DNA of 64,000 nt, taken from assembly GCA_964252035.1 (NCBI GenBank), contig OZ176203.1; one strand, 5' to 3'. Position 1 is the first letter of the stretch. Every line of letters begins with the position of its first letter. The position numbers were made by a program, and so were the translations under genes. This document shows positions 49,293 to 51,955 of this stretch, piece by piece. Source of the stretch: Podarcis erhardii. Lineage: Eukaryota. The notes beneath the pieces were generated by a model. That model was not told the origin of the DNA. It made no database searches and was given only the letters and a program-made list of their open reading frames with translations.

Positions 49293-50277
49293 TAGAATCA
49301 TAGAATCGTAGAGTTGGAAGAGACCACAAGGGCCATCGAGTCCAACCCCCTGCCAGGCAGGAAACACCATCAGAGCACTCCTGACATATGGTTGTCAAGC
49401 CTCTGCTTAAAGACCTCCAAAGAAGGAGACTCCACCACACTCCTTGGCAGCAAATTCCACTGTCAAACAGCTCTTACTGTCAGGAAGTTCTTCCTAATGT
49501 TTAGGTGGAATCTTCTTTCTTGTAGTTTGGAACCATTGCTCCGTGTCCGCTTCTCTGGAGCAGCAGAAAACAACCTTCTTCCCTCCTCTATGTGACATCC
49601 TTTTATATATTTGAACAGGGCTATCATATCACCCCTTAACCTCCTCTTCTCCAGGCTAAACATGCCCAGCTCCCTTAGCCGTTCCTCATAAGGCATCGTT
49701 TCCAGGCCTTTGACCATTTTGGTTGCCCTCCTCTGGACACGTTCCAGTTTGTCAGTGTCCTTCTTGAACTGTGGTGCCCAGAACTGGACACAGTACTCCA
49801 GGTGAGGTCTGACCAGAGCAGAATACAGTGGCACTATTACTTCCCTTGATCTAGATGCTATACTCCTATTGATGCAGCCCAGAATTGCATTGGCTTTTTT
49901 AGCTGCCGTGTCACACTGTTGGCTCATGTCAAGTCTGTGGTCAACCAAGACTCCTAGATCCTTTTCACATGTACTGCTCTCAAGCCAGGTGTCACCCATC
50001 TTGTATTTGTGCCTCTCATTCCCCCCCCCCCCCAAGTGCAATACTTTACATTTCTCCCTGTTAAAATTCATCTTGTTTGTTTTGGCCCAGTTCTCTAATC
50101 TGTCAAGGTCGTTTTGAAGTGTGATCCTGTCCTCTGGGGTGTTAGCCACCCCTCCCACTTTGGTGTCATCTGCAAATTTGATCAGGATGCCCTTGAGTCC
50201 ATCATCCAAATCGTTGATAAAGATGTTGAGTAAGACCGGGCCCAAGACAGAACCCTGTGGCACCCCACTAGTCACTC
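49293..50277 (-). mobile_element. 5'-truncated CR1 LINE (~985 bp), young
   Basis: CR1 ORF2 C-terminal coding region, 3' UTR and (ATTCTATG)-type tail (plus strand TAGAATCATAGAATCGTAG at 49293). Confidence 0.97.
49370..50275 (-). pseudogene. CR1 ORF2 reverse transcriptase C-terminal remnant (302 codons including the terminal stop, one internal nonsense)
   Basis: [13 protein letters not shown]...LIKFADDTK (RT catalytic motif)...[13 protein letters not shown]...[40 protein letters not shown]. Internal TGA at 49463-65 (likely CGA>TGA); no frameshift. Confidence 0.95.
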
Positions 50278-50574
50278 TTCTTATAGGGGCTGGGGGGGGG
50301 GAGTGTGGATTACGTTGCATTCTGGGTGAAAGCTACAGATTTGACTTCCTTGTCCATAAATTATCTCAGGGACAGCCAACATAGTGTCCTTCAGTTATTA
50401 CTGGACTTCAACTCCCATCAATGCTATTATTCACAATACTGGCTGGTTCTGATAGGAGCTCAAGAACAACAATATCTGGTTACAGATAGGTAGCCGTGTT
50501 GGTCTGCCATGGTCAAAACAAAATAAAAAAAATCCTTCCAGTAGCACCTTAAAGACCAACTGAGTTAGTTCTAG

Positions 50575-50612
50575 GTATGAGCTTTCGTGTGCATGCACAC
50601 TTCTTCAGATAC
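50575..50612 (-). ncRNA. Minimal type I hammerhead ribozyme motif in the 3' pLTR
   Basis: Minus strand GUAU-CUGAAGA-A-GUGUGCAUGCACAC-GAAA-GC-UC/AUAC: intact CUGANGA and GAAA cores, 4-bp stem I, palindromic stem II, self-complementary AGCU stem III. Predicted cleavage between 50579 and 50578. Confidence 0.88.
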
Positions 50613-50635
50613 ACTGAAACAGAAGTCACCGGACC

Positions 50636-50699
50636 TTTCTATATAGTGAGAAGGTGGGGAGGGGTATTACTCAGAAGGGTGGTGGGAATGGGTGATTGG
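50636..50699 (-). promoter_or_regulatory. Putative Pol II core promoter of the left pLTR (mirror of 50977-51063), firing leftward
   Basis: Minus-strand CCAAT (50695-99), CACCC, CCCCTCCCC and TATATAGAAA (50636-45). Exact inverted copy of the right-arm motifs. Function inferred. Confidence 0.5.
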
Positions 50700-50792
50700 C
50701 AGATAGCTGCGATGAGCCTGTTGACGACTCTTAACGACTGCAATAGGTCTAACAGGAAAAAGCAAGGGGTGAGAAGGTGAAAAATGGCTTTG

Positions 50793-50897
50793 TCATGTAT
50801 AATGAGATAAGAATCCAATGTCTTTGTTCAAACCAGGTCTCTCCATAGTTTTAAGTTTGGTGATAAGTTGCAATTCAGCAGCTTCTCTTTCCAGTCT
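50793..50897 (-). pseudogene. Penelope ORF C-terminal remnant (end of GIY-YIG endonuclease domain), 34 aa + stop
   Basis: RLEREAAELQLITKLKTMERPGLNKDIGFLSHYT*. The RxxxExxxIxxLxT...GLN pattern is characteristic of the PLE GIY-YIG C-terminus. Confidence 0.85.
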
Positions 50898-50976
50898 GGA
50901 ATTTCAGAAATAGCTTTTTCCTGTTAGACCTATTGCAGTCGTTAAGAGTCGTCAACAGGCTCATCGCAGCTATCTG

Positions 50977-51063
50977 CCAATCACCCATTCCCACCACCCT
51001 TCTGAGTAATACCCCTCCCCACCTTCTCACTATATAGAAAGGTCCGGTGACTTCTGTTTCAGT
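50977..51063 (+). promoter_or_regulatory. Putative Pol II core promoter of the right (inverted) pLTR, firing rightward
   Basis: GCCAATCA (CCAAT 50977-81), CACCC (50995-99), CCCCTCCCC (51012-20), TATATAGAAA (51031-40), and Inr-like TTCAGT with A at 51061, 30 nt after the TATA start. Confidence 0.5.
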
Positions 51064-51101
51064 GTATCTGAAGAAGTGTGCATGCACACGAAAGCTCATA
51101 C
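51064..51101 (+). ncRNA. Minimal type I hammerhead ribozyme motif in the inverted pLTR
   Basis: GTAT-CTGAAGA(51068-74)-A-GTGTGCATGCACAC(51076-89)-GAAA(51090-93)-GCTC/ATAC. Predicted cleavage after C51097. Confidence 0.88.
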
Positions 51102-51955
51102 CTAGAACTAACTCAGTTGGTCTTTAAGGTGCTACTGGAAGGAATTTTTTTATTTTGTTTTAACAATATCTGGGTGACCCCCCCCCCCCTGGGTTAGCTG
51201 GTGTGGACAAACCAAGTGGATCCTACACAGTTGGGAAAGAAGATTTACCAGGCTGTATGGCCAGTGGTATATCAGCGTAGCCTATGCAATGTTGCCCCAG
51301 GCACTCACACACAGAATAGATGACTGTGTGCTTACTCATTCTTTCTTCAGTGTAGATGTGTATGCACAGCCACCCCTGATATCTGTGGTGCTATGTGTGG
51401 TTGCCCAGCCCACACATTTACTAGGGGGTGTGTGTGTATGTGTTCAGTGATCTTGGAACCCAGGCCACATATTTCATTCCTACTTCTGCTGCTCCTTCCT
51501 TTGTTTTTCAGTAAAGGCATTTTCCCACCCAGGTGACATATCCCTACCGGTATATAATGTTTAAATATGGAGGCACATATCAGACCTGCCTGGTGAGTTT
51601 CTAAGTCAGGGCACAGAGACGCTGGGTAATAGCAAGAGAAATAAGCTGGCATGGCCAATGGTCATGAGAGTTGTAGTGCAACACTCTGTAAGGATGCATC
51701 ATTCTGGTGACCCCTGCTGTTGACTCCAACATTACTGGTTCAATTTGCAAGAAGATACAGCAGATAAAGTTTTAAACTTACCATGGTTACTGAAACCAAA
51801 CATGGGATATGTGACTGGATTGTCCTTTTGTAAATACACATAATTCCTAACAGGCACAGAGAGTTCTAAACTTGATTTGAACCGTGAGACTGTTATGTAG
51901 GGCGCTGGGTAACTTTTACTCGTGGCATTTTGCTAATACAAATTTCACTACCAAA

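What the first reader, a model, noticed from the sequence alone, without database searches (positions are those of the whole stretch)
50480..51161. Very young Penelope-like insertion: inverted 249-bp pLTR pair, 35-nt tail and 12-bp TSD
Seen: the arms 50515-50763 and 50913-51161 are reverse complements with one mismatch in the A-run. The 149-bp spacer holds the GIY-YIG C-terminus. The sense (minus-strand) 3' pLTR extends 35 nt (50480-50514) beyond its inverted copy, and the TSD is perfect. Established: PLEs often show 5' truncation with an inverted pLTR and a short 3' tail beyond the pLTR. Inference: a single recent target-primed event in which reverse transcription switched template and copied the pLTR twice, implying a currently or recently active lizard PLE family.
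Basis: partly seen in the sequence, partly recalled or inferred. Interest (0 to 1): 0.75.

Follow-up and report, generated by a model that had tools for sequence, protein, structure and literature searches.

The report
Head-to-head truncated Penelope retroelement insertion
This is a real, young insertion of a Penelope-like jumping gene, made of two shortened copies joined head to head inside one target-site duplication; that layout is the published textbook form for this element class, so the finding is ordinary.

Summary
Arms 50515-50763 and 50913-51161 are reverse complements (248/249; the mismatch is 50532 against 51144). They are separated by 149 nt. A 35-nt extension sits on one arm only (50480-50514). 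A perfect 12-bp duplication lies at 50468-50479 and 51162-51173.

- Each arm carries a minimal hammerhead ribozyme that meets the published PLE descriptor (2 hits in the window, 0 in 200 shuffles).
- The spacer ends a conserved ORF found in three independent fragments (E 5e-13 to 3e-4). Longer members show the GH...RLERE...GLN pattern of the green-anole Poseidon endonuclease. No formal GIY-YIG profile hit was obtained.

Inverted 5'-truncated copy, a 30-40-bp tail at one end and a short duplication are all published (PMC3846280, PMC8557442, PMC11167929).

The arms are two 5'-truncated copies (about 418-433 nt and 249 nt), not a defined LTR pair. No complementarity for snap-back exists at the junction.

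Youth is supported (upper bound about 1.8% arm divergence). Current activity is not shown by one copy.

This scan had already noted the same family and layout elsewhere in this genome.

The parts
50468..50479 (.). Left copy of the 12-bp target-site duplication (AACAATATCTGG)
   Evidence: family D2: identical to 51162-51173 and directly abutting the element
50480..50514 (-). 35-nt 'tail': the extra 3' extension of the sense copy, absent from the inverted copy. It holds an ATG in strong Kozak context (GACCATGG; ATG at 50510-50508) that opens MADQHGYLSV
   Evidence: Published PLE tails are 30-40 bp at one end only
50515..50763 (-). Left arm: the 3' part of the longer, sense (minus-strand) copy, comprising the region after the ORF stop, a TATA box, the hammerhead and the sequence up to the proximal end point
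50575..50612 (-). Minimal hammerhead ribozyme motif (copy 1)
   Evidence: descriptor script; criteria of PMC4209133; no Rfam hit
50764..50897 (-). Part of the sense copy not present in the inverted copy: 30 nt after the stop, the stop codon at 50793-50795, and the last 34 codons of the element ORF (50796-50897)
   Evidence: Relatives P0001 and P0002 align from RLERE to the C-terminal HYT
50898..50912 (.). Junction of the two copies: 15 nt that do not match the family protein (window F*NS against family F[KR]N). It includes an 11-nt palindrome, ATTTCAGAAAT, at 50901-50911
   Evidence: The palindrome is weak evidence (5.7% of window positions have one within 10 nt)
50913..51161 (+). Right arm: the second, inverted, 5'-truncated copy (249 nt), ending at the proximal end point without a tail
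51064..51101 (+). Minimal hammerhead ribozyme motif (copy 2); TATA box at 51031, 33 nt upstream
51162..51173 (.). Right copy of the 12-bp target-site duplication

Best explanation
A single retrotransposition event of a Penelope-like element (PLE) left two 5'-truncated copies joined head to head inside one 12-bp target-site duplication. The longer copy lies on the minus strand (50480 to about 50897-50912). It carries the last 34 codons and stop of the element ORF, about 180 nt of downstream region with a TATA box, a minimal hammerhead ribozyme, and 99 nt beyond the predicted ribozyme cut site, including the 35-nt tail. The shorter copy lies on the plus strand (50913-51161). It starts 30 nt after the ORF stop and ends 64 nt beyond the cut site, without the tail. 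Most likely mechanism (inferred, about 50%): the element's endonuclease made nicks staggered by 12 bp. Both 3'-OH ends, each carrying the 12-mer, primed reverse transcription of element RNA, one from the distal and one from the proximal of two adjacent start sites. Both cDNAs stopped early, and their 3' ends were joined by host end-joining with a few filler bases. The element identity and the single event are shown by the sequence. The two-strand priming and the joining step are inferred. The confidence given (0.85) is for identity and single event, not for the mechanism step.
For: Structure and duplication. Hammerhead: exactly two descriptor hits in the window, one per arm, and none in 200 shuffles. 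The motif has CUGAAGA, an extra base between positions 9 and 10.1, G10.1-C11.1, a 5-bp helix II, GAAA, the palindromic AGCU, C17 and a 4-bp helix I, which are the criteria listed for PLE minimal hammerheads (PMC4209133). ORF end: phmmer finds three independent fragments (E 5e-13, 4e-10, 3e-4). P0002 and P0003 extend upstream to GH..D.[KR]V.VL...R..RE...GLN, matching by eye the C-terminal endonuclease of Poseidon_Ac (GH.ILF...RLHREAIEI...FN). The nearest Atlas cluster is named GIY-YIG (0.86 and 0.80; leads only). P0002 begins with the antisense-arm reading frame (81% identity to window 50875-51099 minus, E 6e-17) fused to the ORF end. It is therefore another head-to-head copy with different breakpoints. 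Literature: an inverted 5'-truncated copy at the 5' end, a 30-40-bp tail at one end, and 8-10-bp duplications are described in PMC3846280 and PMC8557442. The anole PLE protein nicks and extends both strands and starts reverse transcription at two adjacent internal sites about 34 nt apart that define the tail (PMC11167929). In that element the tail lies about 55-89 nt past the ribozyme cut site; here it lies 64-99 nt past it. Both junctions read as flank, then 12-mer, then antisense of the element's 3' end on the strand that carries the 3'-OH. This is the geometry expected for priming on each strand.
Against: No reverse-transcriptase sequence is present in this copy. No GIY-YIG profile hit was obtained, and Rfam reports no hammerhead. 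The mechanism rests on one copy plus in vitro work on a different PLE family. The published alternative, self-priming suggested by palindromes at inverted junctions (PMC3846280), cannot be excluded, and an 11-nt palindrome does sit at this junction.
Confidence: 0.85

Rival explanations
1. One reading: one target-primed reverse transcription in which the enzyme switched template or the cDNA snapped back on itself (self-priming) and copied the 3' region a second time in inverted orientation. The free end was then resolved at the tail boundary by the endonuclease.
For: PMC3846280 interprets palindromes at inverted PLE junctions as self-priming. An 11-nt palindrome lies at 50901-50911. PMC8557442 attributes the tail to endonuclease resolution of the intermediate.
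Against: The bases before the inverted arm (50905-50912...CAGAAATA) are not complementary to the bases after the left arm (50764-50771), so nothing holds a snap-back primer. The palindrome does not continue into the arm and is expected by chance at 5.7% of positions. A copy templated on the first cDNA should have run through the tail. Instead it stops at the point that matches a separate start site.
Confidence: 0.3
2. Two separate insertions: a second copy of the element landed exactly at the truncated 5' end of an older copy.
For: The PLE endonuclease can target its own sequences (PMC11167929).
Against: The 12-bp duplication brackets the whole structure. Neither copy alone is flanked by a duplication. 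The arms differ at 1 of 249 positions.
Confidence: 0.04
3. Assembly or library fold-back artefact rather than real genomic DNA.
For: PLE inverted structures are known to trouble assemblies (PMC8557442). No reads could be laid here.
Against: A fold-back chimera gives a symmetric palindrome whose flanks are also mirror images. Here there is an asymmetric 149-nt spacer and a one-sided tail. The two flanks are different and unique, and they share a perfect 12-bp direct duplication.
Confidence: 0.02
4. A fold-back DNA transposon or MITE with 249-bp terminal inverted repeats.
For: Long inverted arms and a flanking duplication.
Against: The ends are unequal by 35 nt. The spacer is the end of a retroelement ORF with relatives. 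PLE-type hammerheads lie in the arms. Another copy has different arm lengths.
Confidence: 0.01

Closest known systems
Poseidon_Ac / PAc, the Penelope-like element of the green anole (PMC11167929)
   Same: Reptile PLE with a hammerhead just upstream of, or overlapping, the ORF start. The tail is about 34-35 nt and lies a similar distance downstream of the ribozyme cut site. The end of the endonuclease shares RL.REA.E and a following Asn. The landing site is AT-rich.
   Different: It is a different family: no nucleotide similarity is visible in the hammerhead, the tail or the region after the stop (one search compared, by eye). In PAc the ORF starts in helix II of the ribozyme. Here the ATG in that helix is closed after 7 codons, and the likely start is the Kozak ATG inside the tail.
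Pen2a_Av and Pen2 derivatives of the rotifer Adineta vaga (PMC3846280)
   Same: An inverted pLTR completes the insert. A 31-bp tail is present on one of the inverted pLTRs. The duplication is 9-10 bp. The pLTR has a TATA box, and the first codons of the ORF lie in the pLTR plus tail.
   Different: Those copies keep a full or long ORF between the repeats. Here only 34 codons remain, and there is no direct pLTR.
LINE-1 twin priming (from my own knowledge, Ostertag and Kazazian 2001; not read here)
   Same: Both nicked target strands prime reverse transcription. The result is an inverted, truncated insertion inside one duplication.
   Different: In L1 the second primer anneals internally, so the inverted part is a different, upstream segment of the RNA. 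Here both copies begin at the element's regular 3' start sites, so the same 249 nt is present twice.

Membership tests
Penelope-like elements (endonuclease-containing) | PLE-type reverse transcriptase domain | not testable with these tools
   This copy is truncated to the last 34 codons. Full-length relatives could not be fetched (look-up of encoding contigs closed; metagenome scans empty).
Penelope-like elements (endonuclease-containing) | C-terminal GIY-YIG endonuclease | tested here: inconclusive
   There is no Pfam or PDB profile hit. Relatives extend to GH..D.KV.VL...RLERE...GLN, which matches the Poseidon_Ac endonuclease end by eye. The nearest Atlas cluster is named GIY-YIG at 0.86 and 0.80, below the level that counts as more than a lead.
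Penelope-like elements (endonuclease-containing) | Tandem or inverted 5'-truncated copy forming terminal repeats (pLTR) | tested here: met
   A 249-nt inverted copy adjoins the 5' end of the sense copy, as described in PMC8557442 and PMC3846280.
Penelope-like elements (endonuclease-containing) | Optional 30-40-bp tail at only one end of the insertion | tested here: met
   The 35 nt at 50480-50514 are present on one arm only.
Penelope-like elements (endonuclease-containing) | Short target-site duplication of variable length at an AT-rich site | tested here: met
   There is a perfect 12-bp duplication, and its left half, AACAATAT, is AT-rich. Published examples are 8-10 bp.
PLE minimal hammerhead ribozyme (min-HHR, PMC4209133) | Catalytic core CUGANGA...GAAA...UH, with an extra base between positions 9 and 10.1, G10.1-C11.1, palindromic 15.2-16.2, and helix I pairing | tested here: met
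   The script descriptor finds 2 hits in the window, at 50575-50612 (minus) and 51064-51101 (plus), and 0 in 200 shuffles. The MFE of the 133-nt module forms helices I and II.
PLE minimal hammerhead ribozyme (min-HHR, PMC4209133) | Match to a curated Rfam hammerhead model | tested here: not met
   No hammerhead family appears even at E up to 10 on 142 nt. This is expected for minimal motifs with a 1-bp helix III, which the cited paper found with its own descriptor.
PLE minimal hammerhead ribozyme (min-HHR, PMC4209133) | Self-cleavage | not testable with these tools
   This needs an in vitro assay. Published PLE hammerheads cleave poorly alone and need dimers or protein.

The most novel reading that the evidence does not exclude
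This copy is a natural record of two-ended target-primed reverse transcription. Each strand of one staggered break primed its own cDNA, one from each of the two adjacent start sites known so far only from in vitro work on the anole element. The cDNA ends were then joined by a host end-joining polymerase that left a small snap-back filler (the 11-nt palindrome). A census of such copies in this genome could turn the in vitro model into an in vivo rule for Penelope-like elements.
Probability: 0.45. Interest if true: 0.35.

Novelty: new member of a known kind. Interest (0 to 1): 0.17.

Why it matters
It matters little on its own. It is one more copy of an abundant reptile retroelement, with the layout published in 2006-2024. 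Its modest value is as a clean specimen. The near-perfect arms, perfect duplication, one-sided tail and readable junction let one copy display both reverse-transcription start sites and the joining point. A genome-wide tabulation of such copies could therefore test how Penelope-like elements make inverted insertions, which the literature still calls undefined. A 249-bp perfect hairpin with two outward-facing promoters may also be a local source of double-stranded RNA or of replication trouble. Nothing here shows such an effect.

Tried and rejected
- **Rfam:** two searches gave no hammerhead. The MIR838 hit (33 bits against a gathering score of 190) is only the long hairpin and was rejected.
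- **Pfam:** scans of the 36-aa peptide, the arm/tail frame and P0001-P0003 gave nothing relevant; the weak S25 and GFD1 hits were rejected.
- **PDB profile search with A1:** only chance-level hits.
- **Word-based protein search with P0002 residues 33-86:** only the query itself.
- **Metagenome scans:** an exact 25-mer from the hammerhead region gave none. The protein-pattern scan gave 95 pattern matches, none confirmed.
- **Cluster look-up:** P0001-P0003 are singletons from short ENA contigs, with no names and no organism.
- **Window searches:** self-blast of the element and of the reconstructed empty site found no other copy and no paralogous empty site in the window.
- **ORF start in the hammerhead, as in PAc:** the ATG in helix II is closed after 7 codons; only a GTG-initiated frame stays open.
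- **Microhomology at the tail-less end:** the target and the tail start match at 4 of 6 positions, with a chance of about 4-10%, so this is not used as evidence.
- **Alignment to Poseidon_Ac:** no formal alignment was made, because its sequence exists here only as paper text and I did not type it into a tool. That comparison is by eye.

Full report
**Observation.** The sequence, the repeat finder and a self-blastn agree.
- 50515-50763 and 50913-51161 are reverse complements at 248 of 249 positions.
- The one difference is 50532 (A) against 51144, at the edge of the A/T run.
- The arms are 149 nt apart.
- The 12-mer AACAATATCTGG stands at 50468-50479 and again at 51162-51173, touching both ends of the structure. 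For a fixed pair of positions this has a chance of about 6e-8.
- Between the left 12-mer and the left arm lie 35 nt (50480-50514) with no partner on the right.
- The repeat finder's 255-nt arms arise only because the first six bases of that 35-mer and of the 12-mer agree at 4 of 6.
- As single-stranded DNA the 682 nt fold at -335 kcal/mol against -73 for shuffles.
- Neither the element nor its flanks recur in the window.

**What the arms are.** Each arm contains CUGAAGA, one extra A, a 5-bp helix closed by G-C, GAAA, the palindrome AGCU, C, and a 4-bp helix I (GUAU/AUAC). The motifs lie at 51064-51101 on the plus strand and 50575-50612 on the minus strand.
- A descriptor script written from the published criteria found exactly these two sites in 64 kb and none in 200 shuffles.
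- The criteria are those given for minimal hammerheads of Penelope-like elements: a base between positions 9 and 10.1, a G10.1-C11.1 pair and palindromic 15.2-16.2 (PMC4209133).
- Rfam models do not report it, even at E up to 10. This fits the paper's point that these minimal motifs needed their own descriptor. The only Rfam 'hit', MIR838 at 33 bits, is the hairpin itself.
- A TATA box lies 33 nt upstream of each hammerhead.
- The sense direction of the right arm is plus and that of the left arm is minus, so the two copies face outward from a shared head-to-head junction.

**What the spacer is.** On the minus strand the spacer reads YF*NSRLEREAAELQLITKLKTMERPGLNKDIGFLSHYT, followed by a stop at 50793-50795.
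- An exhaustive phmmer search with the 36 residues found three proteins: P0001 (91% identity, E 5e-13), P0002 (83%, 4e-10) and P0003 (50%, 3e-4). All are unnamed singletons on short ENA contigs.
- All three end at the same ...SHY[TR] C-terminus, so this is the conserved end of a repeated ORF.
- P0002 and P0003 reach further upstream and show GH..D.[KR]V.VL, then R..RE, then GLN.
- The Poseidon_Ac protein printed in PMC11167929 ends its GIY-YIG endonuclease with GH.ILF...RLHREAIEI...FN. Six of nine residues of RLEREAAEL agree. This comparison is by eye.
- Formal tests did not reach GIY-YIG: Pfam and a PDB profile search gave nothing. The Atlas's nearest cluster is named 'GIY-YIG domain-containing protein', but only at 0.86 and 0.80, which counts as a lead.
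- I therefore treat 'end of the element ORF' as shown and 'GIY-YIG' as likely.

**An independent second example.** The first 32 residues of P0002 are 81% identical (E 6e-17) to the frame that runs antisense through the window's arm (ORF 50875-51099, minus). They are followed directly by the ORF end.
- That contig therefore holds another head-to-head copy. Its inverted arm is shorter and its sense copy longer than here.
- So the inner edge of the 249-nt arm is only a truncation point, 30 nt after the stop codon. It is not the border of a defined LTR.
- This scan's own notes list the same family in this genome with arms of 66, 85, 100 and 222 bp and 'one arm 30 bases longer'. I did not check those notes.

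**Where the sense copy ends.** Both close relatives read F[KR]N-RLERE where the window reads F*NS-RLERE.
- Homology is certain only up to 50897.
- The 15 nt at 50898-50912 may be filler. They include an 11-nt palindrome (ATTTCAGAAAT, 50901-50911).
- Such a palindrome lies within 10 nt of 5.7% of window positions, so it is weak evidence.

**Comparison with the literature.** The architecture is described almost word for word.
[quoted passage not shown] The pLTR plus tail holds the first codons of the ORF (PMC3846280).
- Here the tail contains GACCATGG, a strong Kozak ATG opening MADQHGYLSV. The ATG inside the hammerhead is closed after 7 codons.
- The ORF of this family therefore probably starts in the tail. 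This is an inference.

**Mechanism.** Purified anole PLE protein nicks and extends both target strands. It starts reverse transcription at two adjacent internal sites about 34 nt apart, and these define the tail.
- In that element the tail lies about 55-89 nt past the hammerhead cut site. Here the two ends lie 64 and 99 nt past it.
- On the plus strand the left junction reads 12-mer, then antisense of the tail end. On the minus strand the right junction reads 12-mer complement, then antisense of the tail-less end.
- This is what is expected if each 3'-OH of a break staggered by 12 bp primed its own cDNA, one at each start site.
- Joining of the two truncated cDNA 3' ends with a little filler would complete the structure.
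The bases before the inverted arm (...GAAATA) are not complementary to those after the left arm (expected ...CCCCTT). A copy templated on the first cDNA would also have to stop, unexplained, exactly at the tail boundary.
- I put about 0.5 on two-strand priming and 0.3 on switch or snap-back. One copy cannot decide between them.

**Age and activity.**
- One difference in 249 arm positions plus 12 duplication positions gives a Poisson 95% upper bound of about 1.8% divergence between the copies.
- All five CpGs per arm are intact in both arms. The element's CpG observed/expected ratio is 0.36 against 0.19 for the window.
- The insertion is young. At squamate neutral rates of roughly 1-2e-9 per site per year (from my own knowledge, uncertain) the single difference points to about 1-2 million years or less. 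The 1.8% bound allows up to roughly 5-10 million years.
- Gene conversion between arms could make the insertion look younger.
- 'Currently active family' is not shown by this copy.

**Artefact and other rivals.**
- A fold-back chimera would be symmetric, with mirror-image flanks. Here the spacer and tail are asymmetric, and the flanks are different, unique and share a direct duplication.
- Two separate insertions are unlikely, because only the whole structure is bracketed by a duplication.
- A DNA transposon with long inverted repeats does not fit the unequal ends, the ORF end or the hammerheads.

**Limits.**
- Both metagenome scans were empty.
- The organism ('wall lizard' in earlier notes of this scan) was not verified by me.

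**Verdict.** The finding is real, correctly recognised as a Penelope-like insertion, young and ordinary. The same family and layout were already noted by this scan elsewhere in this genome.

Noticed in passing
window 49463-50320 (minus strand): A 285-aa open frame with the FADD motif, a CR1/L2-type LINE reverse-transcriptase fragment (Pfam RVT_1, E 1.7e-13). It ends about 160 nt from the Penelope insertion site.
   Followed up: partly
window 50020-50034, 50292-50301, 51178-51189: There are three long homopolymer runs (C14, G10, C12) within 500 nt of the insertion. They form short inverted pairs (I2, I4, I5). One pair would bracket about 180 nt of the pre-insertion site. Their origin is unknown.
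   Followed up: no
window 50508-50510 (minus strand), inside the tail: An ATG in strong Kozak context (GACCATGG) opens MADQHGYLSV up to the tail end. The family's ORF probably starts inside the tail, unlike the anole Poseidon element, whose ORF starts in hammerhead helix II.
   Followed up: partly
window 51031 (plus strand) and its mirror in the left arm: A TATA box lies 33 nt upstream of each hammerhead. In the head-to-head layout the two putative promoters fire outward into the flanks. The left one points toward the LINE fragment.
   Followed up: partly
window 50509-50514 against 51162-51167: The first six bases of the tail (GACCAT) and of the target duplication (AACAAT) agree at 4 of 6. The tail-less cDNA primer could therefore have paired weakly with the RNA just 3' of its start point. 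Chance is about 4-10%.
   Followed up: partly
protein P0002 (ENA contig of 598 nt, not in the window): This is another head-to-head copy of the same family. Its antisense-arm frame has Cys where the window has Arg (CGT). That change would correspond to a G12-to-A change in the hammerhead core by CpG decay. This is an inference from the amino acids only.
   Followed up: no
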